Assembly: GCA_038087875.1 (NCBI GenBank)
Contig: CM075989.1
Span: 14,756,001-14,820,000 of the forward strand
Origin: Malacoraja senta
Taxonomy: Eukaryota
Direction of reading: 5' to 3'
DNA: 64,000 nucleotides
Notes under the pieces: model-generated
Databases searched by the model: none
The model's input: only the letters and a program-made list of their open reading frames with translations
Told to the model about the DNA's origin: nothing
Shown: positions 4,801 through 55,374 of the stretch, piece by piece
Position numbering within the stretch: position 1 is the stretch's first letter
How the letters are laid out: the number at the start of each line of letters is the position of its first letter
Translations under genes and position numbers: made by a program

Positions 4801-5704
4801 AGAAGTATCAGGTCCACTCAAGATGTCCACTCAATTTCCAACGAACCACAGATGGCCCCGAACTCCGAATGTGTCAGATTAATCCTTAGCTGTCTGTTTA
4901 ACGTTTGCCGTACAACATTTATATGTAATGGATACTAATCTTATTTAATCCCAGATAGTCAATCTTTTTTCCCCCAGGGCTGAAATGTCAAATACCAGAC
5001 ATCATAGAATTATGGTGAGAGGGGAAGTTTAAAAGAGCTTTTTAAAACACTCTCACGTTCCTGGAAAGCACCACCTAGGAGGTGGAGGAAGCAAATACAA
5101 TGTGTATTGTTTAAGAGACATTTAGGCAGATGCATGAACAGACAGGGAATGGAGAGATATAGACAATACTCAGTAAGTCATCACTGCCAGCGAAAGCTCA
5201 AGTAGAAGAGTAACAATGGGGTTTTGGTGAACAGAGAACACTTATGCAACCCAAACTGTGCTTAAGCAGACAGCATCTCTAGCATTGCAGTGATTATGAA
5301 GCTATCCTTGATGCAGCAGTGAAGATAGACACAAAATGCTAGAGTAACTCAGTGGGACAAGCAGCATCTCAGGAGAGAGGGAATGAGTGATGTTTCAGGT
5401 CAAGACCCTTCTTCAGACCTTCAGACCTGATGCAGCAGCAGTTGACGAACGATGCCTTCTACCCATGTGTCAAGATTTAAATATTACGTTAGGCTGTAAA
5501 TAATTAGATCTTTATCCAGCTTAATCTAGTCAAAGCGAGGCAATACCACGCGATGATTCATAACTCTCAAATCTATCACATGGGGTAAAATCATCAAATA
5601 TTTCTGGCAATCATGAACAAGTTCCTTCAAGGAGTCAACATTGTTTGTCATTCTCTGCGTCGGTCTGGAGAAGGCAAGCCTTCCAATATGTGGACTCTGC
5701 ATCA

Positions 5705-6105
5705 ACATTGTTTTCTCTGGAACATCATAGATTGAGGGGAGACTTGATAGAAGTAAATAAAATGATGAGAGGGTAGACAGTCAGGCCCTCTCCCCCCACA
5801 GTGGAAATGTCCAACACTAGAAGGCATAGCAGAGAGGGGGAAAGTTAATGGAGATGAGCGGGACAAGTTTATTTTTTAAACGGAGAGCAGTGGGGGCCTG
5901 GAACGCATTGTCTGGGATGGTGGTGGTGGAGACAGATCTGATAGTGGTGTTTAAGAGGCTATTAAATCGGCATATGGAAGTGCAGGGAATAGAGGGATAT
6001 GAATCATGTGCAGGCAGATGAGACCAGTTCAGCTAAGCATCATGTTCGGTGCTACATTATGGGCCGAAGGGCCTGTTCCTGTGCTGTATTGTTCTATGTT
6101 TTAGG
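5705..6105 (+). mobile_element. CR1 3' end
   Basis: LRGDLIEV-like segment and 3' end gggccgaagggcctgttcctgtgctgtattgttctatgtt. Confidence 0.8.
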
Positions 6106-9992: not shown

Positions 9993-10445
9993 ATGACCAG
10001 GCTTTCGGCCTGACCCACTGCCATGACCAGGCTTCCCTGCCTGACCCACTGCCATGACCAGGCTTCCCTGCCTGACCCACTGCCATGACCAGGCTTTCCT
10101 GCCTGACCCACTGCCATGACCAGGCTTCCCTGCCTGACCCACTGCCATGACCAGGCTTCTCTGCCTGACCCACTGCCATGACCAGGCTTCCCTGCCTGAC
10201 CCACTGCCATGACCAGGCTTTCCTGCCTGACCCACTGCCATGACCAGGCTTCCCTGCCTGACCCACTGCCATGACCAGGCTTCCCTGCCTGACCCACTGC
10301 CATGACCAGGCTTCCCTGCCTGACCCACTGCCATGACCAGGCTTTCCTGCCTGACCCACTGCCATGACCAGGCTTCCCTGCCTGACCCACTGCCATGACC
10401 AGGCTTCCCTGCCTGACCCACTGCCATGACCAGGCTTTCCTGCCT
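9993..10445. repeat. 31-bp minisatellite, about 14.5 copies
   Basis: Unit atgaccaggcttccctgcctgacccactgcc. Explains the three repetitive ORFs at 9820-10489. Confidence 0.97.
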
Positions 10446-27711: not shown

Positions 27712-27810
27712 CACAAGTCTGGTGTGGTCCACAAGTCTGGTGTGGTCCACAAGTCTGGTGTGGTCCACAAGTCTGGTGTGGTCCACAAGTCTGGTGTGGT
27801 TCACAAGTCC
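27712..27810. repeat. 18-bp tandem repeat, about 5.5 copies
   Basis: Unit cacaagtctggtgtggtc. Confidence 0.95.
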
Positions 27811-43400: not shown

Positions 43401-46400
43401 ATTGTGTGTCTATCTTTGGTTTAAACCAGCCTTTGCAGCTTCTTCATACAAAATGCCTTTGCTCTCATAGTCAGTAAAATCATCATAGGAACTTATAGGA
43501 AGCAATGTCTCAAAACAGTATCCAGCATCATCAAGGACCAACACCACCCTGGCCACACTCTCATTTCACTTCTGCCATATCGGGAAGAAGGTATATGAGT
43601 GAAAACTGTAATGTCCAGGTACCAGAACAGCTTCTTCCCAATGGCCATCAGGCTGTTGAACATTACGAACTCCAACTAAACTCTGAATTGCCTTGATTGC
43701 AGTCGTGACTTTGGGATCTTTTTTTTTTTTTGGCACTATATTGGGTTTATTTATATAATTATTTAATTTGTTTCTGTTTGTTTATTATATTATCTATTGA
43801 GTACTGCATTTACAAATCTGTTGTGCTGCTGCAAGTGAGAATTTCATAATTTCATTTTGGTACAAAACACTCTTTAACTTTTTTGATAAGCCAAGGAAGT
43901 AGTACTGATCTCCCAATCTACCTCATTGCGGCCCTTGCACTTTAAAATAAAACTGCACTTACTCTGCATCTATAACACTATAATACAACATTCTGCACTT
44001 AGGTATTTTTTGTTTGCACGACCAGTTGTACTTGTGTATGGCTTGTTTGGAGGGCAGTTTTTTACTGTATTTTAGTAAGTGACAATAATAAAGCAATACC
44101 AAAAGGTTAATAAATGTGCCCAAACTCAATAGGTCATTACACCCTAAAACATATTACACATTCAATGAGATCAGACTAATCTGTAATCCATCTATGATCT
44201 GCTTTTGCATCATAATCCTTTAGTTTATTAGATTAACAAAGATCAATCTCAAATTTAAAGTTTAACTGACCTAGTATCAACTAATATTTCCAAAAAACTT
44301 TCTTATGTCTACTCTTTTCTTGATGCAATGGTGTTTCGTTAATACACCCGAAAGGCAGGCTTTTAATATTTAGGACTGTCCTGTACTTTTAGGCTCCATA
44401 ATCAGCAGAAATTGTTTACATTTATCTTACCTAAAAATTGTATGTTACCTCTGGCTTCATACAGCATCCACATGAGACTTCAGATGAGGCTAGTTCCTCT
44501 TAGAAATCGCAATATTCTACCCCAGGAGGCCACACCTGGATACTAAGGGAATCAAGAAATATTTGAATCGTGGAAAAGTGATCCCATGGCATAGAACTGG
44601 CTAAGATCTTATTAAACAGCAGAAAAGGTTCACAGGCTTGAAGTGGTCAGGCACATGGACCTAGCCTGTAGGGCTTACCCGCATTTTGTAAACACCTAAT
44701 GGTAGACAGGGTGCATTCCTACTCACCAAGTTAGATCAGTCTTGTGTAGCAGCACGAGATAAGGCCACTGTGAACAATGTGGCAATTGGAGAGATATGGC
44801 CTGAATCTAGTAACATTATGATAACTAAGACTTCAACTTAACAAAGGAATACCTTAAGCATGAGACCACCACACAGTGATCTCTAAGCAGGAGATAATCA
44901 AGCAGAAAAAGGGGATTGCAGAAGCAATTGATCACACACTTTTTCATGTTGGATTGATTATGACGTGATAACTAAAATACTTTTTGCTGGAGATGCTTTA
45001 CCTTTTTTCTAAATGTGTATAATATTTTTATGGTTTGTACAATCAATGAATGAGTGTACAGAATGCACCAGTAAGGCAAACAAACCTCTCTCCTTCCCTT
45101 CTATAGATGAATAACTGTGTGGCCAAAGAATGGACTGTGCAAGAGATATTCTTCCACCACAAGACTGCACATCCTATTCCTGCTTCTACATTCTTAAATT
45201 CTTCAATACTTAATGTCTCACCCACCTATATCAAGCCCAACAACTTGATACTACTCCTATACTAGTGGGTAGTCGTATATTATAAAAGCAAGAGTGGTAA
45301 AAAATATATATTTTTTGTGTGGCAATGTTTTATTATCTGTTCTCATGTCTTATGGTGTTGGTGAAAGCAACATTTATTGTCCATCCTTAGTTAAGAAAGC
45401 AATGGTCATCTTTCTCCTTGAACCATTGTAATTGTTGCAGAAGAGTAATTTGTCCAGCTTGGCAGTGTAAAGTTGTCGTTCAGCAGGATTCATCCATTTC
45501 CTACTCAGTGGCTTCAGCTTCTGCAGAAATATAGAAAAAAACTGCTTATAGTCTCAAAGAACCCACAGAACTTGGGAAGTCTGAGAATAAACATCACCTT
45601 GCAATGATTACCTGAATAGTTATTGTGCCATTTGATACACTCCATTGTGCTTCTTTTCCTAAATATGCATCTTAAAACATTTTTTTTAAATATGGCACCT
45701 TTAACAATAGCATAATGTACCACGGTGCATTCAGGAAATATTATTAACAAAACTTGATGCCAAGCAATTTAAGAATATATTATAGTAAAGATTTGCCCAA
45801 AAAGGTTTAACAGAGTGCCTTGAAGCATGAAAGAGAGTTTGATAGATTTAGGGGAAAACGTTCAGATTTTAGAACCGTGACTGCTAAAAATAAAAATGTG
45901 CAAAAGGCCATAACGAGAGAACCATAATGATAGTTGCTGGCAGAATGGCAGAGTTCTGAAAGTACCAGAAAGAGAAGAATTTTAAAATACACACAAAATG
46001 CTGGAGTAACTCAGCGGGACAGGCAGCATCTTTGGAGAAAAGGAATAGGTGATGTTTCAGGTCGAAACCCTTCTCCAGAGATGTTGCCTGACCCTCTGAG
46101 TTATTGCAGCATTTTGTGTGTATCCCAGTTGATGACTGGTGCTCGGCTTTCGCCGGCACAGAGGGGGGTTAACCGACAGCCACTGGATAAAGCGAAAGAT
46201 GCAGCTGACAGTCCCCGGCCTGTCGGGGAACAGGTTCCTCGGGAGATGGAGCAGAATTGAGCTGGAGTTTGCGCTTCTTCTCCGCGCTGGCTGTAAGTCT
46301 GGGGCCACCACTGCTCCAGGCCGGTGTTCCATCAGTCCAGGGTCACCCCGGACATCTCTGGCCGCCCCCGGACAGGGATGGGACACTCAGGAGGGTACAG

Positions 46401-46778
46401 TAGTGAGACTCCGCTCACAAATCTGCCTCCTGGGGTTATGCAGGAGGAGCACATGGTTCAGCCCCTGTATAATAACCCTGTATAACCCAGGAGGGCAGCC
46501 CGAGTGAGAATGGAACCCATACACCCAGGTTGAGAGGGACTGGACCGTGATTCATTAGATTGACACTGCTGAAATTTCTGCATGGACCAGTGGAGAAGGG
46601 AGAAATAATGTAGCTAACTCCAGTAGCAATTCAACAGCACTTGCAGCGCCGGAGACCCGGGTTCGATCCTGACTACGGATGAAACGCAGGTCCGTATACA
46701 CACAGCAGCTCAGCTGCCGAGAATGTTTTTCTCGAGTGACCTATGACCTGGGCATGCGCAGTCGGAATACCGAACTCA

Positions 46779-46784
46779 TTTATT
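46779..46784 (-). terminator. Candidate PIGBOS1 polyA signal
   Basis: Minus-strand AATAAA about 440 nt downstream of the PIGBOS1 stop. Confidence 0.35.
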
Positions 46785-47219
46785 CAATAATGCTACAGTA
46801 AAACTCAACACTAAGCATCCAACCAATCATCATTGTAGTCACAGTATTCCACCAAAAAAAAGTGGCACTTATTTCTACCAAGTATTTGGCTCAGAGTTCC
46901 TTACTACACAATTATTTGGATTAAGAATATGATTAGAAACATAATTAATATAATTAAAAACTATAAAATGAAATATGCATATTGTAACCCAAGAAACTAA
47001 TACCCAATTTAAAGAATTTGTTTATAATCTATTGTTTCACATGTCAAAAGTCATACCAATATTTTGATTTACATAATAAAGGCATCTCTGGAGAACATGG
47101 GCAATGGCCAAATGTTCTTCGATGCCCAGCTGCAGTGAGCCAGCACAGTTGCAAGGCTCAGTCCCCCGCCCACTGTACCGCGGGGAGCTGTCGTACACGT
47201 TGCCACGACCCTGCCTCAC

Positions 47220-47489
47220 TCACATTGAGCGGTGAAAGGCCGGTGGTCGGGGAGCACTAACCGGCCTCGCCTCGCCGCCCCCTTTACCTTTACCGTCGCC
47301 GCCCGCGGCCCGAGGCGGCGCTGAGTCGTCGGTGTTGTCGGTGCCGCCGGGAGCCGGATTGTTGCCCTGCGCCTTGGCTTGTTCCAGGCGATACTGTTTA
47401 TACAGCGGCCTGTAGATGTACAGTCCGCCCGCCACCCCCACCACGGCCGCCAGCGTCAGCTGAGGGAAGGTCAACCCGCCCGGCAACAT
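47220..47489 (-). CDS. PIGBOS1: PIGBOS1 mitochondrial outer-membrane microprotein
   Basis: MLPGGLTFPQLTLAAVVGVAGGLYIYRPLYKQYRLEQ matches recalled human [36 protein letters not shown]. Single TM segment, syntenic with CCPG1. The C-terminal end is uncertain. Confidence 0.9.
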   Translation of the reverse strand: MLPGGLTFPQLTLAAVVGVAGGLYIYRPLYKQYRLEQAKAQGNNPAPGGTDNTDDSAPPRAAGGDGKGKGGGEARPVSAPRPPAFHRSM

Positions 47490-47800
47490 GGACGCTCAGT
47501 GGATGCGCCAACCACCCACCGGCAACATGGCCGCTCAGTGGATGCGCCGCCCGGCAACATGGCCGCTCAGTGGATGCGCCGCCCGGCAACATGGACGCTC
47601 AGTGGAGGCGCCGGCCCGCCAACCACCGGCAACATGGCCGCTCAGAGGAGGCGCCGGCCGCCCGGCAACATGGCCGCTCAGTGGATGCGCCAACCACCCA
47701 CCGGCAACATGGCCGCTCAGAGGAGGCGCCAACCACCCAACCACCGGCAACATGGCCGCTCAGTGGAGGCGCCGGCCCGCCAACCACCCAACCACCGGCA
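47480..47800. repeat. GC-rich minisatellite (32-43 bp units, 8 copies plus a partial) containing the PIGBOS1 start context
   Basis: Core ccggcaacatgg(c/a)cgctcag(t/a)gga(t/g)gcgcc repeated with variable (a/c)-rich spacers. Confidence 0.95.
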
Positions 47801-47864
47801 GTGCAAAGCGCACGCGCGGCCTCCTCTAAAAAAAATTAAAATTGGGTTTTTTTCCCCCTTTTTC

Positions 47865-48024
47865 CTTCAGCCCACAATATTTAATATGTAAAAGAATATG
47901 TGATTCTGTTCCATTCTGTTTGTAGTTTGTTTGTTTGTTTTTTTGCACAAAGTCCGCGAGCATTGCCACTTTTCATTTCACTGCACATCTCGTATGTGTA
48001 TGTGACGAATAAACTTGACTTGAC
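47865..48024 (+). mobile_element. LINE 3' tail (Rex1-like) next to the PIGBOS1 promoter
   Basis: Ends ...gtgtatgtgacgAATAAActtgacttgac, a typical LINE end of AATAAA plus short tandem repeat. Confidence 0.6.
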
Positions 48025-51000
48025 GACCTCTCCACCAACACTCAATTCACTCCAAAGGTGGAGGAAGGAGCTATAGACCAAAGATACACACAAGAAGCTG
48101 GAGTAACTCGCCCCCTGTATCAAAGGACTACATCGACTTATTGGGAAGTAGAAAGTAAACAGAGTACGTTTCCCACAAGCATTTAAAACCCTTTCCTGCT
48201 TCCACACTAAGCATTGCTACAACAGAATATATTCTGATTCAATCATGCATGTTCCTAGTCCCAGGGAGAAAAAGGGTACAGCAAGATGGTTTCTCAGTGA
48301 TACGTATCCCTCCCCCCCCCCCCCCCCTTCACAGAATTAAACTAAACAATTAATCTGCATTTTAGAACAACATTGATCAATAGCAATAGTTTCCAAATGA
48401 ACACAGAATGCCTCTCTTCAAAGCTTTTCTTCGATCTCTATTATAGTTGGGAAATCTGTTTTCTACTGCAAAAGTTACATTTTGTAAAAACAAACCATGG
48501 CCGAGTTTGGTATAAAAAGGTAGAACTTGTTCAGCTCAATCGATAAAAAACTAACTTTCCGTGCAAAATATATACTTTATTTATTGCATAACAATACCCT
48601 TCTATTTCCTCTATCTTTCTATCTTTGTCCCGCCCATTCTCCTGACAACAGTATGAAGAAGGGTCTCGACCTGAAACATCACCCATTTCTTCTCTCCAGA
48701 AATGCTGCTGCCTGTCCCGCTGAGTTACTCCTGCATTTTGTGTGTCTCCCTTCCACTCCCTTCTTGGATTGCAGACCCACTTAAACACAAGTGTGTAGAA
48801 AGGAACTGCAGATGCTGGTTTACACCGAAGATGGGCGCAAAAAGCTGGATTAACTCAGCGGGTCAGGCAACATCTCTGGAGAAAAGGAATAGGATCGATT
48901 TCACGCCTTTGAATCGTGTCGCAGACCTGCATGCAACGATATATGTTGAGAATGGAAACATTTCACTCAAATCATAGAAAGCATGTTAATTATTGAAATT
49001 GACTAAATTCAATAAATTATCATGCTTCTTAAATTGATATGGCAAATTTATTAATGTTTACGCTTCCAGTTTACCAGGGGTGAAATAGGGGGACCTTACA
49101 GCATACTAAACATTTATTTTGAAAGGTTTTTCATTATGTATTTATATTTCTCTCAAACTTACAAGCCAATCTTATTGGAGATGCGAGAAACTGCAGATCC
49201 TGAAATCTTGAGCTAAAAAAAGCGCTGGAGTAACTCAAGTGGATCAGGTAGCATCTATGGAAGGAATGAACAGGCGAGCCTATTGGGTTGCGAGCCTTCT
49301 TGAGGACATCAGTTCCTCCAGCACATTGCTTTTTGCTCAAGATAATATAATTGATTTTGTGTTCCAAGTCAGTGCAGGAGATTGTGTTGACTCAATCTTT
49401 CTCTTTCCATACCCTCCTCACACTTGACCCATTGAACCCTGTGTTTACCATTTCTTGGCTTACTTATCCAGCTGATTCAGATCACACAGCAAGATTTGTC
49501 AACCTTCTCCGCCGTCTATAAAACCTATTATTTTTGTGTCATCTGCAAACTTACTAACCATGCTTTGTACATTCTCATCCAAATTGTTTGGTTGACTAAT
49601 AACAACAACAGGCCCAGCACCAATTCCTGTGGCACATCACTAGTTACAGGCCTCCAATTAAAAAAAAAAAAAAAAAAAACCTTCCACCATCAGTTTCTAC
49701 TTTCAACTATCAAGCCAATTATGTATCCAATGCTCTCTCTGGAATTTATGTTCTAAACTTCCTGACTAGCTTATCATACAAGACTTTATCAAAGGCTTAC
49801 TAAAATCCGTATAGACAGCAACCATCTCCCAGCCCTCATCAATCCCCTTGGTTATCTCTTCAAAAAGAACAGATTTATGAGACACATTTCCCCTCACACG
49901 AATCAATGCTCCCCAAGCAGTCCTTATCTATCCAGATGGTACAAGATCTTGTCTCAGATATTTGTTTGCTATTCGTATTACTCAAATTGCAAACCTTAAA
50001 ACCCATAAAATATATAACAACGCTGCATTAGTCAATTAAAGTGGTATAACAATATTGGACATAAATATGTGCAACCCAAGACCTTAATAACAAAGGGAAC
50101 TAAGAATAGTTAAGACCTCATCTTAAGTGGATTTTATTCATAAAGGTGAGATTATTAACTTGCAACGCAGCTTTCCTTATATCTGATGTCTCGATTTATT
50201 ACCACCATTTGAATTGCGGTAGATGTTAATGAAAGAGGGATTATGGCAGAAGGTTGGACTTTCTTCAGTTGAATCCTGGAAAACCGCCATCAGCACAGGT
50301 TCACTAGCTTAATATGCATTGGTTGGGGCCAGGCTCCAGGTCAGGTGCTCTGAAACTGGTTAGGGATGGATATTTAACTGCAATGGTTATGTTAAAGTTG
50401 AAAATATTCAATAATACTATATTTTATCGTCACTAAATTAAATAGGCGTGTGTAGGAAGCTAATTGAAAACTTGCACACAGAAGCCTTCTTTAAATCTAT
50501 ACAAAATGAAATGCACTTTTACGCACAAACACAATGAGGCTACAATTCCCTGCTCGCAGACTTCACATCTATCAGAATTAACTCCCCCTCCTCCTAATGG
50601 GGTTCTGAATTAGTAATTGCATATTGTACCTTTCCAAATATTCAGCAATACACCTCTGCCAATGGTACTCCACAGATAGAACCCACAAGTATAAACTTCA
50701 CAGATAGCAGTCAGGTGTGATCAATATCTAAATATAGTCAAAAACAAAATGCTTATGCCTTATTGTCCTTTAATGGCTTCTGAGCTTAGTGGCAGTGTTT
50801 TTCTCCTTTTTACCAGGTATTGATGGAACAAGATCATACCCAATAAATTCCTTATATATTTTGCTGCCATTCTAACATCTCTCTTTGGAAACAAGTTTAC
50901 TTTGGAAATTAAAAAAGTGTTGAACTAACTCAGCAGATCAGGCAGCATCTCTGGAGAGCATGCATAGGTGATGTTTCAAGTCAGAACCTCTCTTCAGGCA

Positions 51001-51257
51001 GAGGAGATGATCTGTTGAATCAAGAAACTCAAATAATGGTCACAAAAGACTGAAAACCAAGTTCTTAAATTAACAACAAAAAAACATTTTGAAACCACAG
51101 AATTTATTTTTGCAGTAGCTGCATCAGTATACAGTAAATCAGATTCATATACATGTAGAAATATTGGGTGACCCTTCCTGGTTGATATATTCTTAAGCAC
51201 ATACAAACTCGCCACACGAATAAAACAGCTTCACAAATAAAGAGTTAAGCCAGAACT

Positions 51258-51263
51258 TTTATT
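51258..51263 (-). terminator. Candidate CCPG1 polyadenylation signal AATAAA (second candidate at 51103-51108)
   Basis: AATAAA on the minus strand about 650 nt after the stop, at the end of an AT-rich, repeat-free 3'UTR. Confidence 0.5.
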
Positions 51264-51906
51264 ATCAATTGATTTTAACATTTTTGTTTGCCTACAATTG
51301 TTCATTTTGTCAAATGGAAAATGTAGATGCAATGTAACTGATTTTAAATTAATAATGAAACCCATCTCTTTTATCCCTTGAAATCATAAAAGGCAGATAT
51401 ATATATTTGTGTAAAATTATTCACAACATGGGGGAAGGTAAAAATGGACCAATTTTTGCCATGGAATTAAATTACAATCTTCAAAAGAAATTTAAATTCA
51501 GCACACCAATATTAATAACTTACACAATATGGAATTTAGGTTCACATGATAGCAAATTACGAATTTGCTAAGGCAAAAGAGACTTGCATTTCATGCACAT
51601 ACACCAGTATACGAATAGACTTTGTAAATGCATTAAAGATCCAGCAACTTGAACTCTTACTTAATCCTAAACTTTGTTTAGCACAACATACTTTGCACAA
51701 CACAACTGCTCAGGAAATCTCTAACCAGCACATTGCAAATACAGATGGAATATTATTAGCAAAACTACATCTACTCTTATTATTCAAAGTCAAATGAAAT
51801 GCATATTGTTTCAAAACAAACGTCATTATTCTTAGGCATGTACCACAAACAGCAATCAGATAAGTCTGAACATGTTCAAACACATACTTATGAAGAACAC
51901 ACCCAT

Positions 51907-52108
51907 TTAATATTTTGGATCAAAAGGCATCGGCCCCAGCTCAATTTCAACATTCGCCATGTGTCTTCCATTGGTACGTCCTGCCTTGTTCCATTTACAA
52001 TCCCTGTGGTGGTAAGCCTGCTGGTATTTCCTTTCAGGTCTCTGTTGCCTGGAGCCAGATGCATGTTTAGAATTATGCTTTCTGTATTTATCAGCATCGT
52101 AAAGTGGA
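51907..52108 (-). CDS. CCPG1: CCPG1 last coding exon
   Basis: Acceptor tttgcag|T completes a TGT codon. Ends [24 protein letters not shown], versus recalled human [24 protein letters not shown]. Confidence 0.95.
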
Positions 52109-52454
52109 CTGCAAAGATAAAAATTATTCATTATGGCCTTTAAGTAAAATAGCCAAGATTGGTCTATTCATTTGTAATTCCCAATATGCATTAGTATAAG
52201 TGCAATAGGTTTTTAGAAATACTATGGCCACATTTCAAGCAGCATTATAATAATCTTACTTTAGAAAAGGAGTAGATGAATGTATTGATAATGATCCTTT
52301 TGATACTTGGTCCTGGAGCAGTGGTAAAGCAAAAAGGAACTCAGCTGGTTGAGGAGATATTTTATGGCTATCGGCGAATATTATACATATATTTCATTTT
52401 TCAATCTATAGACACCTAGATATCAATCAATAGACCACCTTGGTATCAATCAAA

Positions 52455-52692
52455 ATTAAGGCGAGAGGGGCAAAGTTTAAAGATGATATATGCAGAGGGT
52501 GGCGAGTGCCTGGAACTGGGGTTGGTGGTGGAGACAGATTTGAGAGTGGCATTTAAGAGCCGTTTGGATAGGCATGTGAATTTGCAGGGAATGGAGGGAT
52601 ATGGATTATGTGCAGGCAGATTTGGTCTTGGCATCATGTTCAGACATTGTGGGCCAAAGGGCCTGCTTCTGTCCAGTACTCTTCAATGTTCA
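52455..52692 (+). mobile_element. CR1 3' end in the last CCPG1 intron
   Basis: FKSRLDRHVNLQGMEGYG followed by the gggccaaagggcctg tail. Confidence 0.75.
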
Positions 52693-53526
52693 AAAGTAAT
52701 GAATCTTTTTCTTATTGAGGGATCCTAAATTAAGTGGATTAGATTTGATGAATCTATCTTCTATTAATGGAGATCTAAAAATCTGCGGTCCAAACTGGCA
52801 ACTGGATATTCAGTGCAGATTCCAACTGTCCAATGAAGACACTGGCTGGCCAACTGACAGGAAATTAATTGCAATTGATCTTCAATACCTCTTACATAGT
52901 TAAAAAGAAACAGGTGTAGATGACTTTTATAAACTGGAATATGTCATGAACAGAAATCTGGCAGAGTCCTTATAGTTTGCCAAATATGAGAATATAGTTG
53001 TAGTTCTTAAGATTCCTTTGTGTTCATATTTCTGGAATTTTGTTTGTCTCGCACTATTATAGCTGAAATTCTGTTATGTTTACTCACTCCTACACCCAAA
53101 ACATTCATTACAGAATTCCAAATATAACAGAAAATACTGGACGGTTCTCAGCAGGTTGGTGACACGATGGAGAAAGACATTCAACGTTTCCGTTGTGGAG
53201 GAACGGCCATCAATCCAAAATGCAAACTATGTCTCTCTCCGCAGATGCAGCCCAACATGCTGAGGAAGTCCAGTATTTTCTGTTTTTATTTTAAACATTT
53301 AGCCTCTGGTGGCTTTTAGTTTAGCAAATTCCTATTAGCTAGGATTGAATCAATCACGTATCAAATCAAAAACAAATCCCAAAGTTATATACAGTATCCT
53401 GCTCTATATCGGCCAATTTCAAATGGCGAGTTACATTCTGAATATCAAGTGAATGTAATTGTACAACTTAAATAATTTCAGAAACAAACAATTCTAAATC
53501 AACTGGATAAAAGAGCAAACTATTAC

Positions 53527-54971
53527 CATGGTCCAAATTGATTAATGTAATTGTCACCAAACAAGTGCTGATAGATGTATCCATCCAGGTCATCAAAACC
53601 ATCATGGTTGCCTTCTTGGTGCTCTGCAATATCTTCAAGATAATCTTCAACATCATTAACAAAATCAGAGAATAACATTTGGTCATGTATAAAAAGCCCA
53701 TTACGGAAAAAACGGTTGATAAATTTCTCCAGCTCACTCCAGCGTTGGAAGTCGACCATCTCTCGTTGAAGGTAATTATGGAGAAGCTCATGAAATTCTT
53801 CCATCTTGATGGGGTCAAGGACTTTATTAAATAGACTCAAAGATTCTTGGTGGGCACATTCAAAAACATCAGAGCAACCTTTAGGGCTCTTGTTGTGTGC
53901 ATGTTTTCCCAAGTGATCATGTTCACCCGATTCAAAATTGTGAGAGTTCTCAGTGTACATTGTGTGCGGTTTCCTTGAATTGCTACCATAGATCTCCTCA
54001 TGAGTGGCTTGTTTGGGTTTATGTTGATAGGAATCTTTGTCTCCATGAACACCATGTTGTCTGCACTTGTTCGTTTTACATGGGTGTTCGTTGTGACGTT
54101 GCTGGAATCCATGACGTCTAGTTTTCGCATCTGCGTCATCACGTCTCTTATTTTTGTGAAATAATTTTGTTGCTGAGTTTTGGAAGTTCTGGAATGTGGA
54201 TTTAACAGAATCAGAGAATCTCTTAAGATTTTCTTTAACAGCTTCTTTTGCCAGTTTAATCTTTTCTTTATGATGACGCACAAACTCTTTGGTTGAGTTT
54301 TTCACAGCGTCAAACGTATTCTTAAATGATCTTATAAAGCCTTTAGATTGCTTCTTTTTATCCCTAGTTCCATAAAACTCCCGATTTGTTTTTGTCTCTT
54401 GCTTCTTTGCTGTTTTCTTAGTTGCAGGGTCCGTGTTTTCTTCCTTTGATTCAATATAAAGTCTTTCCCACAAGTCAGAGCGTTGCTGTTCAAAATCCAA
54501 TTTTTTCTCTAGCTCTGCAAGTCTTGTTTGTAAACCTTCTGTTATTTTACCATCTCGGGCTGTATTAGGCATGGATTGAAAATGACTCAAGGTATCCAGT
54601 TCCTTACGCAGTACATCAGTTATTTCTCTTTCTTTATCCAATTCCTTTCTTAGCATCTGAGCCTCAGTCACAAGGGTCCCCTTCTGTAGAAGGAAACTGT
54701 GTACTTGTTGTTTTTCTTCTTCTAGATGATCCTTCAGTTTCTGGTTTTCCGTGATGATTGTTTCAGCATCCATTCCCTTTCCTTCCAATGTCCTGATTTG
54801 TTCCCTCAACTTCCGAAGCTCATTCTGCAACAAGGATAATGCTTTCTCTTCATGCTCCAGGGATTCTTTCATACGCTGGTTTTCTTTGGCAAGCACTTGC
54901 TGCTGTGACTCAACAGAAAGCCTCTCATCCACAGTCTCTTTTAAACGAGTTTCCAAGTTTTCTCCTTGTGA
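53527..54971 (-). CDS. CCPG1: CCPG1 large luminal-domain exon
   Basis: Contains LDFEQQRSDLWERLY, KNSTKEFVRHHKEKIK, KENLKRFSDSVKSTF and FIHDQMLFSDFVNDVEDYL, all characteristic of CCPG1. Acceptor ttattcag|TCA, donor CCATG|gtaata (phase 2). Confidence 0.97.
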
Positions 54972-55374
54972 CTGAATAATCATAATATAAATAGTTAAAT
55001 ATCCATTTATAAAGGCAATGTGCGTTATAAAGTCAGTTTATTAGTCATATTATGGGGCAACAAAATTAAATAGGAGCCAAAGTCTACATTTCAATAACTA
55101 TTAAGTACATGCTACATTTTAAAATATCCTTAATAGACCTATTGAAAGACCTCACTGAAATTATTGAAAATTCTAAATAGGTATCCCTTCTGCTGTTTAC
55201 TAGTTGATGGTCACACATATTTTTCAGAGAAGACTGTTCAGAATCACTGAAGCAGATGAGGAATCAAACTTTACTTTTTATTGTAACAATTTCTTTGGAA
55301 AAATAGAAATCTCATCTGTAGAAACCTTTAAGTTGTAGGTACCATCCCTAACTTGCTGGGAAATTTTAAGGAAA

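What the first reader, a model, noticed from the sequence alone, without database searches (positions are those of the whole stretch)
47480..47820. PIGBOS1 start codon amplified into a tandem start-stop uORF / YY1-site array
Seen: each unit reads TGA GCG (G/T)CC ATG TTG CCG on the minus strand, giving ATGs at 47753, 47710, 47671, 47635, 47592, 47560, 47528 and the true start at 47489. Each ATG has an in-frame TGA 6 nt before it, so no upstream ATG can extend the protein. The ATG at 47528 gives a 10-codon uORF ending 6 nt before the CDS, and those at 47560 and 47592 overlap the CDS out of frame. Six upstream ATGs have G at -3 while the true start has T (weaker Kozak). The same six units read CAACATGGCCGC (YY1-type motif) on the plus strand, and an NRF1 site borders the array. 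Established: PIGBOS1 regulates the UPR at ER-mitochondria contacts, and uORF arrays confer eIF2alpha-dependent control. Inference: a copy-number-tunable translational and/or transcriptional rheostat on a stress microprotein. This depends on where the TSS lies.
Basis: partly seen in the sequence, partly recalled or inferred. Interest (0 to 1): 0.8.

Follow-up and report, generated by a model that had tools for sequence, protein, structure and literature searches.

The report
Start-codon minisatellite in skate PIGBOS1 leader
In one skate species the short leader and start codon of the mitochondrial microprotein gene PIGBOS1 were copied seven extra times in tandem; this is a young, species-specific repeat that probably puts decoy start codons ahead of the gene, and nothing shows it is a regulatory device.

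Summary
Eight minus-strand ATGs (47753 to 47489) each sit in TGAGCG(G/T)CCATGTTGCCGG. They are spaced 32-43 bp and lie between a single NRF1-type site (47808-47817) and a PIGBOS1 ORF (Pfam PF23670, 47.4 bits).

Four related skates (two genomes, two RNA contigs) have exactly one unit. A ray has one ATG plus a separate duplication of the NRF1 segment. Two orthologous RNA contigs begin with a template-switch oligo, which places the 5' ends at -52/-51 and -30 from the ATG. The amplified unit is therefore essentially the whole ancestral 5'UTR plus the start codon.

All variable sites are shared between units and two junction types exist. This points to a young minisatellite built by repeated slippage at microhomologies.

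DNA runs from two samples hold about 60% of the array's 31-mers, whereas a one-unit allele could hold 25%. An assembly artefact is therefore unlikely.

No RNA run covers exon 1 in this species, so the TSS is unresolved. Published CpG-island rules favour initiation next to the NRF1 site. That would give a 314-nt leader with seven uAUGs, the first opening a 72-codon uORF, and so constitutive attenuation.

A tuned eIF2alpha/YY1 rheostat is unsupported. Interest is modest.

The parts
47808..47817 (-). NRF1-type palindrome GCGCGTGCGC at the upstream border of the array. It is conserved next to the TSS in all batoid orthologues examined.
   Evidence: single match in 64 kb, 0.04 expected. The same motif lies just upstream of the 5'UTR in L001 and L002. 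GCGCATGCG is present, and duplicated, in L005.
47763..47807 (-). Unit 0: the ancestral-type 5'UTR segment (TTTG CACTGCCGGTGGTTGGGTGGTTGGCGGGCCGGCGCCTCCAC). The position equivalent to the orthologues' -52 TSS (G/CACTGCCGG) is at about 47804-47802.
   Evidence: Alignment A2. The template-switch junction of L003 lies at GCACTGCCGG.
47499..47762 (-). Seven extra tandem units of 43, 39, 36, 43, 32, 32 and 39 bp. Each carries TGAGCG(G/T)CC-ATG-TTGCCGG, with upstream ATGs at 47753, 47710, 47671, 47635, 47592, 47560 and 47528.
   Evidence: The units are absent from L001-L005.
47535..47753 (-). Potential uORF1: 72 codons plus stop, in the frame of the CDS but closed by TGA at 47537-47535. It spans five of the other upstream ATGs.
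47496..47528 (-). Potential last uORF: 10 codons plus stop, ending 6 nt before the PIGBOS1 ATG.
47220..47489 (-). PIGBOS1 coding sequence (89 aa plus stop), lying entirely in exon 1. The N-terminal 42 residues are identical to Leucoraja erinacea.
   Evidence: Pfam PF23670 at 47.4 bits. 90% identity to L. erinacea PIGBOS1. 5 synonymous and 0 non-synonymous differences in the first 42 codons.
47057..47219 (-). 3'UTR part of exon 1. The exon ends at 47057, with a GT donor at 47056-47055.
   Evidence: BLAST of RNA contigs L003 and L004 against the window. Splice-site check.
47100..47850 (.). CpG island (GC 0.64-0.72, CpG observed/expected 0.8-1.07) covering the CDS, the array and the NRF1 site.

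Best explanation
The feature is a young, lineage-specific minisatellite inside the CpG-island promoter and leader of the skate PIGBOS1 gene. In related skates the gene has a compact layout: an NRF1-type site, then a 30-52 nt G-rich 5'UTR, then the ATG. In this species repeated replication slippage or unequal exchange has copied almost the whole 5'UTR, the ATG and the first 2-5 codons seven extra times. The events used short homologies: TGCCGG before the UTR and after the ATG, and GGCGG. The in-frame TGA, the ATG context and the YY1-like CCATGTTG were carried along passively with each copy. The array now separates the only NRF1 site from the true ATG by about 320 bp. The most likely consequence is inferred, not shown. 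Transcription still starts next to the NRF1 site, giving a GC-rich leader of about 314 nt with seven AUGs. Six of them are in a better context (G at -3) than the true start (T at -3), and the first opens a 72-codon ORF. PIGBOS1 translation from such mRNAs would be constitutively and strongly reduced. Residual protein would come from leaky scanning or reinitiation, or from minor TSSs in the last units. In short, it is an accidental attenuator and potential VNTR, not a built regulatory device. The confidence given covers the whole statement. The origin part (a young, lineage-specific minisatellite of the leader plus ATG) alone rates about 0.9, and the long-leader attenuator consequence about 0.55.
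For: The array and its anatomy are shown. Four skate orthologues have a single unit and the ray L005 has a single ATG. RNA contigs L003 and L004 start with 20-23 non-genomic nt that read ...ATCAACGCAGAGTACATGGG, which I recognise as the SMART template-switch oligo. Genomic sequence follows from -52/-51 and -30 of the ATG. The ancestral leader therefore equals the amplified unit, and there is no upstream exon. All three variable sites in the units are shared by at least two units, two units are identical, and there are two junction types; this indicates several recent events. DNA runs from two samples hold 0.59 and 0.62 of the array words, against 0.25 for a one-unit allele. Depth over the array is single-copy-like, 42-73 against 30-37 in the flanks. 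The NRF1 site is unique in the window and conserved. Published rules: NRF1 sites lie just upstream of the TSSs they activate (PMC11269187). NRF1 is a chromatin-opening factor and the most gene-proximal opener sets the dominant TSS, whereas YY1 does not open chromatin (bioRxiv 10.64898/2026.05.04.722487). The leader from 47803 folds at -164.5 kcal/mol. Other tandem duplications and minisatellites sit at this promoter in relatives (L005 54 bp x 2.1; L002). Three minisatellites occur in this 64-kb window.
Against: There is no RNA evidence for this species. The RNA runs found held only interspersed repeats and had zero depth on 47208-47743. The window's ORFs are in no gene collection. GC-box cores (GGGCGG) occur in units at 47663, 47584 and 47552, and each unit repeats sequence that hosts a TSS in relatives. 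Initiation inside or at the end of the array is therefore plausible and would remove most or all uAUGs. The CDS is intact with only synonymous changes in its conserved part. That fits continued function, though the array may be too young for decay to show. The TSS rules come from mammalian cells. Copy number could not be verified independently, because de Bruijn contigs break inside the array (the contig covering 46748-47509 ends there).
Confidence: 0.55

Rival explanations
1. Array of mini core promoters. Each unit repeats the segment that carries the TSS in relatives, and several units carry a GC box. Transcription therefore starts at many places in the array, including the last unit. A good share of mRNAs would then have the ancestral short leader and be translated normally, and the array would be nearly neutral or would raise promoter output.
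For: Orthologue 5' ends at -52/-51 and -30 lie inside the amplified segment. GGGCGG cores lie at 47663, 47584 and 47552. The whole array is CpG island. TATA-less CpG-island promoters initiate over broad zones, and the most gene-proximal opening factor sets the TSS (bioRxiv 10.64898/2026.05.04.722487). The conserved part of the CDS is intact.
Against: Internal units lack the NRF1 site, which is the only conserved upstream element. The -52 TSS context GCACTGCCGG is replaced by CCATGTTGCCGG in internal units. The -30 context of L004 (CCAGGCC) is absent from the window. There are no RNA data.
Confidence: 0.28
2. The array is a selected, copy-number-tunable device: a uORF ladder that gives eIF2alpha-dependent (ATF4-like) induction of PIGBOS1 under ER stress, and/or a YY1-site array that tunes transcription.
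For: If the leader includes the array, short uORFs (10 and 9 codons at 47710 and 47671) are followed by two CDS-overlapping out-of-frame uORFs (47592, 47560). This formally resembles the ATF4 layout. Six units match 11 of 12 positions of the YY1/TISU-type consensus on the + strand (the core AAGATGGC is given in PMC2518114). PIGBOS is linked to the ER stress response (abstract of bioRxiv 10.64898/2026.01.08.697870).
Against: The array is absent from four skate orthologues and a ray. It has no private substitutions, so it is young. Every 'design' feature (TGA, ATG context) is inherited from the single ancestral unit. The first AUG opens a 72-codon uORF in adequate context, which disfavours reinitiation. 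The YY1-like motif is antisense to PIGBOS1, whereas the TSS-downstream YY1/TISU element works in one orientation (PMC2518114). The ancestral site reads ATGGAC, and the CCAT core is lost in L005. There is no evidence of copy-number polymorphism or of any expression response.
Confidence: 0.08
3. Assembly artefact: the true genome has one unit (or far fewer) and the array was created by mis-assembly.
For: Contigs from the DNA run break inside the array, so copy number was not confirmed by a spanning record. The best DNA holder may be the sample the assembly was made from.
Against: Two samples hold 59-62% of the sampled array 31-mers, and a one-unit allele could hold at most 25%. The units differ in length and sequence in ways that need several distinct junctions in the reads. 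Depth is single-copy-like.
Confidence: 0.03

Closest known systems
Promoter and 5'UTR minisatellites (VNTRs) such as the TYMS 28-bp 5'UTR repeat just upstream of its ATG, the MAOA uVNTR and the CSTB dodecamer (recalled from general knowledge, not tested here)
   Same: Units of tens of bp repeated in tandem in a GC-rich CpG-island promoter or leader next to the start codon. They arise by slippage or unequal exchange and can change transcription and translation with copy number.
   Different: Here each unit contains the start codon itself and the first codons, so each added copy adds an upstream AUG. No polymorphism or expression effect has been shown. It was found in a single skate species.
uORF-mediated translational control of the ATF4/GCN4 type
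   Same: Several upstream AUGs, including short uORFs followed by uORFs that overlap the CDS out of frame.
   Different: There is no conservation. The first uORF is long (72 codons). The last uORF ends only 6 nt before the main AUG. The presence of the uAUGs in the mRNA is unproven.
TISU / TSS-downstream YY1 element (core AAGATGGC, +5 to +30, one orientation; PMC2518114)
   Same: [quoted passage not shown] The + strand reads CAACATGGCCGC.
   Different: The motif is in the TISU orientation only on the strand opposite to PIGBOS1. The orthologue leaders are 30-52 nt, against a median of 12 nt for TISU genes. The ancestral unit reads ATGGAC.
NRF1-driven CpG-island promoters of nuclear genes for mitochondrial proteins
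   Same: A conserved GCGCGTGCGC/GCGCATGCG site lies at or just upstream of the mapped 5' ends in orthologues. NRF1 sites lie preferentially upstream of TSSs (PMC11269187).
   Different: In this species about 290 bp of repeat now lies between the NRF1 site and the coding sequence.

Membership tests
PIGBOS1 (Pfam PF23670) | Sequence match to the family profile above the curated cut-off | tested here: met
   47.4 bits against a cut-off of 27, E 2.2e-12, residues 5-41; 90% identity to L. erinacea PIGBOS1.
PIGBOS1 (Pfam PF23670) | Conserved synteny next to CCPG1 | tested here: met
   A 486-aa ORF at 53523-54983(-) lies where the CCPG1 gene (PF27636/PF27631) lies upstream on the same strand in L001 and L002. 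It was placed by position only: Pfam gave it only a sub-threshold match.
Minisatellite / VNTR | Head-to-tail units of about 10-100 bp with variant units | tested here: met
   eight units of 32-43 bp, TRF scores 183-258.
Minisatellite / VNTR | Copy number varies between individuals | not testable with these tools
   Only de Bruijn contigs of two samples were available, and they break inside the array.
ATF4/GCN4-type uORF control | uAUGs lie in the mature mRNA leader | tested here: inconclusive
   No RNA run covers exon 1 in this species. Orthologue TSSs at -52/-51 and -30 fall within the amplified unit.
ATF4/GCN4-type uORF control | A short, reinitiation-permissive first uORF followed by an inhibitory uORF that overlaps the CDS | tested here: not met
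   The first AUG (47753) opens a 72-codon ORF. Overlapping uORFs do exist (47592, 47560).
ATF4/GCN4-type uORF control | Conservation of the uORFs among related species | tested here: not met
   There is no upstream ATG unit in L001-L005.
TISU / downstream YY1 element | Core AAGATGGC on the sense strand, with its ATG as the start codon | tested here: not met
   The sense strand reads GCG(G/T)CCATGTTG. The AACATGGC reading is on the antisense (+) strand. The orientation rule is from PMC2518114.
TISU / downstream YY1 element | Located +5 to +30 from the TSS (very short leader) | tested here: inconclusive
   Orthologue leaders are 30 and 51-52 nt, at or beyond the upper limit. The TSS in this species is unknown.
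TISU / downstream YY1 element | YY1 binding | not testable with these tools
   Needs EMSA or ChIP.

The most novel reading that the evidence does not exclude
The array is transcribed as a leader and acts as a natural, copy-number-variable uORF ladder. It would make PIGBOS1 synthesis dependent on eIF2alpha phosphorylation or on TSS choice. That would be a case of a stress-responsive translational switch born in one step by tandem duplication of a gene's own start codon.
Probability: 0.08. Interest if true: 0.6.

Novelty: new variant of a known kind. Interest (0 to 1): 0.3.

Why it matters
If the array is in the mRNA, it is a clean natural example of how uORFs can arise in bulk: by duplicating a gene's own leader and start codon. 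It would also be a natural hypomorph of a conserved mitochondrial microprotein. If transcription starts inside the array, it shows how a compact NRF1-type CpG-island promoter tolerates internal expansion. Either outcome is of modest, mainly illustrative value. The array occurs in one species, is young, and has no expression data.

Tried and rejected
1. RNA evidence for the TSS. Two run searches and one read-laying run were used. The 'RNA holders' proved to hold only interspersed repeats (45990-46135, 46540-46800, 47850-48145, 48550-48950) and had zero depth over exon 1 and the array. X25, a run from the same study, was also empty there.

2. Exact look-ups of the window's 89-aa ORF and the 72-aa uORF1 in the gene collection found nothing on record. 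No annotated model or RNA contig for this species could be used.

3. DNA for the shark orthologues P0006 and P0007 was not retrievable, and P0008 is not on record. Conservation of the start context beyond batoids was therefore not tested.

4. Specific RNA structure in the leader was rejected: MFE -164.5 kcal/mol but z-score +0.34 against shuffles. There are no three-tetrad G-quadruplex motifs, only two-tetrad GG runs.

5. Rfam found no match in the window.

6. A literature search for VNTRs that carry start codons or uORFs gave no directly comparable case.

7. N-terminal extension of the protein from upstream in-frame ATGs was rejected: TGA at 47537-47535 and at 47498-47496 close the frame.

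Full report
**Observation**

The minus strand of 47480-47830 contains eight copies of TGAGCG(G/T)CCATGTTGCCGG. Their ATGs are at 47753, 47710, 47671, 47635, 47592, 47560, 47528 and 47489, spaced 43, 39, 36, 43, 32, 32 and 39 bp.

- Tandem Repeats Finder reports the array with periods 32, 43 and 75 and scores 183-258.
- The + strand motif AACATGGMCGC occurs eight times, all in the array, against 0.02 expected.
- None of the uORFs is a true start-stop element.
- The ORF from 47489 (89 aa) matches Pfam PF23670 PIGBOS1 at 47.4 bits (cut-off 27).
- A single NRF1-type palindrome GCGCGTGCGC lies at 47808-47817 (0.04 expected).
- The CDS, array and NRF1 site form one CpG island.

**Organism and orthologues**

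The closest proteins are PIGBOS1 of the skates Leucoraja erinacea (90%) and Rhinoraja longicauda (80%), plus two proteins from Logan RNA contigs. The window is therefore from a skate.

In both skate genomes (L001, L002) CCPG1 lies a few kb upstream on the same strand. In the window a 486-aa ORF at 53523-54983(-) sits in the corresponding position.

At the orthologous place L001, L002, L003 and L004 have exactly one unit. Its layout is the NRF1-type site, then CTGCCGG(T/C)GGTTGG...CGGGCCG(G/T)CGCCTCCA(G/C)(T/C)GAGCGTCC, then ATGTTGCCGG (alignment A2). Sequence further upstream is unrelated among the species.

A more distant batoid (L005) has one ATG (GGTTATGCTGCCGG) and a conserved GCGCATGCG site. 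It also has a separate 54-bp x 2.1 tandem duplication of the NRF1 segment. The array is thus specific to the window's lineage, and this promoter is prone to tandem duplication in batoids.

**Ancestral TSS**

L003 and L004 begin with 20-23 nt that do not match the genome and read ...ATCAACGCAGAGTACATGGG. I recognise this as the 3' end of the SMART/Smart-seq template-switch oligo; that recognition is from my own knowledge.

Genomic sequence follows from G/CACTGCCGG, 52 or 51 nt before the ATG and at the edge of the NRF1 motif, in L003. In L004 it follows from the A of CCAGGCC, 30 nt before the ATG.

The contigs are spliced. Exon 1 carries the leader, the whole CDS and about 150 nt of 3'UTR, ending at window 47057 with a GT donor. 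Further 3'UTR exons map to about 45520-45387, 37660-37539 and 32170-31236. There is no upstream exon. The ancestral 5'UTR is only 30-52 nt, which is the very segment that was amplified.

**Origin and age**

The units show two junction types. One is ATGTTGCCGG|TGG(T)TGG, which joins the codon-3 GCCGG to the GCCGG at the start of the UTR. The other is ATGTTGCCGGGCGG|C(CG)GCGC, which joins at GGCGG. At least two different slippage or unequal-exchange events at microhomologies must therefore have occurred, followed by higher-order duplication: units 47710 and 47528 are identical, and 47592 and 47560 differ by one base.

The three substituted sites (G/T at -3, C/A in CGC(C/A)TCC, A/T in CC(A/T)C) are each shared by at least two units, and there are no private substitutions. 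The last rounds are therefore recent. T at -3 and CGCCTCCA are the ancestral states. The TGA at -9 is present in L001, L003, L004 and L005 and was copied passively.

**Artefact?**

Two DNA samples of the same species (X19, X20) hold 0.59 and 0.62 of the sampled array 31-mers. A hypothetical one-unit allele could hold only 0.25. Depth over the array is 42-73, against 30-37 in the flanking single-copy sequence. Contigs break inside the array, so the exact copy number is not independently confirmed, but a simple artefact is unlikely.

**TSS in this species**

This remains unresolved. The RNA runs found through the k-mer index held only interspersed repeats and had zero depth over 47208-47743. The window's ORFs are not on record in the gene collection.

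**Likely consequence (inferred, not shown)**

Three published findings bear on where transcription starts.

- NRF1 sites lie preferentially just upstream of the TSSs they activate, and YY1 sites lie just downstream (PMC11269187).
- NRF1 is a chromatin-opening factor, the most gene-proximal opener sets the dominant TSS, and YY1 does not open chromatin (bioRxiv 10.64898/2026.05.04.722487).
- The TSS-downstream YY1/TISU element has core AAGATGGC, lies at +5 to +30 and works in one orientation (PMC2518114).

On these rules the single conserved NRF1 site should still place the dominant TSS at the upstream edge of the array. That gives a leader of about 314 nt (MFE -164.5 kcal/mol, no more stable than shuffles) with seven AUGs.

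By Kozak's rules (established knowledge), six of these AUGs (G at -3) are in better context than the true start (T at -3, T at +4). The first opens a 72-codon ORF, after which reinitiation is inefficient. The expected effect is constitutive attenuation of PIGBOS1 synthesis.

There is a counter-argument. GC-box cores occur in three internal units (47663, 47584, 47552), and the units repeat TSS-bearing sequence. Initiation within or at the end of the array could therefore restore short-leader mRNAs. I rate the long-leader outcome at roughly 55% and the dispersed or proximal-TSS outcome at roughly 30-35%.

**The YY1 and rheostat claims**

The YY1 claim is weak for three reasons.

- The YY1-like motif reads in the TISU orientation only on the strand opposite to PIGBOS1.
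- The ancestral unit is ATGGAC.
- The CCAT core is not conserved in L005.

The rheostat claim fails on lineage restriction, youth, passive inheritance of all 'design' features, and a long first uORF. A formal ATF4-like arrangement does exist: short uORFs at 47710 and 47671 are followed by overlapping uORFs at 47592 and 47560. A stress response cannot be excluded, but nothing supports it.

**Verdict**

This is a real, young, species-specific minisatellite that multiplied the PIGBOS1 leader and start codon. It is a new variant of the known class of promoter and 5'UTR VNTRs, unusual because every unit carries an AUG. Its function is unproven. It is most likely an accidental translational attenuator, or else near-neutral.

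Noticed in passing
window 47830-53500; L001 2221-6001; L002 3961-6001: No PIGB gene lies between CCPG1 and PIGBOS1 in this skate, and none was called there in Leucoraja or Rhinoraja. So 'PIGB opposite strand' is not opposite PIGB in skates.
   Followed up: partly
window 47057, about 45520-45387, 37660-37539, about 32170-31236 (minus strand): In relatives the PIGBOS1 mRNA has its whole CDS in exon 1, followed by two or three spliced 3'UTR exons. The stop codon is thus far upstream of exon junctions, an NMD-prone layout. The exon-2 donor looks non-canonical in the window (AAG|GATGG), and exon 2 is skipped in L004.
   Followed up: partly
L005 1368-1479: In a more distant batoid the 54-bp segment carrying the NRF1 site of the PIGBOS1 promoter is tandemly duplicated (2.1 copies, 93% matches). 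This is an independent tandem duplication at the same promoter.
   Followed up: partly
L002 about 5560-5930; L001 about 5900-5935: Rhinoraja has a minisatellite of roughly 60-bp units, and Leucoraja a (GGGGA)n tract, directly upstream of the conserved GGAGGAGGCCGC-NRF1 block. Only about 25 bp upstream of the TSS is conserved among skates.
   Followed up: no
window 45990-46135, 46540-46800, 47850-48145, 48550-48950: High-copy interspersed repeats, with summed word depths of thousands to millions in the DNA run, which are also present in the RNA runs of other organisms. One abuts the PIGBOS1 promoter. These repeats, not the gene, made RNA runs appear as 'holders' of the region.
   Followed up: partly
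window 9993-10445 and 27712-27809: Two other minisatellites: 31 bp x 14.6 at 97% matches, and 18 bp x 5.4 at 98% matches. Minisatellites occur at about one per 20 kb in this window.
   Followed up: no
window 47220-47300 (minus strand): The C-terminal tail of PIGBOS1 is frame-shifted and lengthened relative to Leucoraja and Rhinoraja (89 aa against 77 and 72). The TAG used in Rhinoraja is out of frame here. The tail varies among all the skates compared.
   Followed up: partly
window 47488-47829 and 47379-47891 (plus strand): On the + strand each unit reads CAACATGG(C/A)CGC, a TISU-like motif in sense orientation. Open frames of 113 and 170 codons run through the array. These are probably by-products of the repeat, but divergent (+ strand) transcription from this CpG island was not tested.
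   Followed up: no
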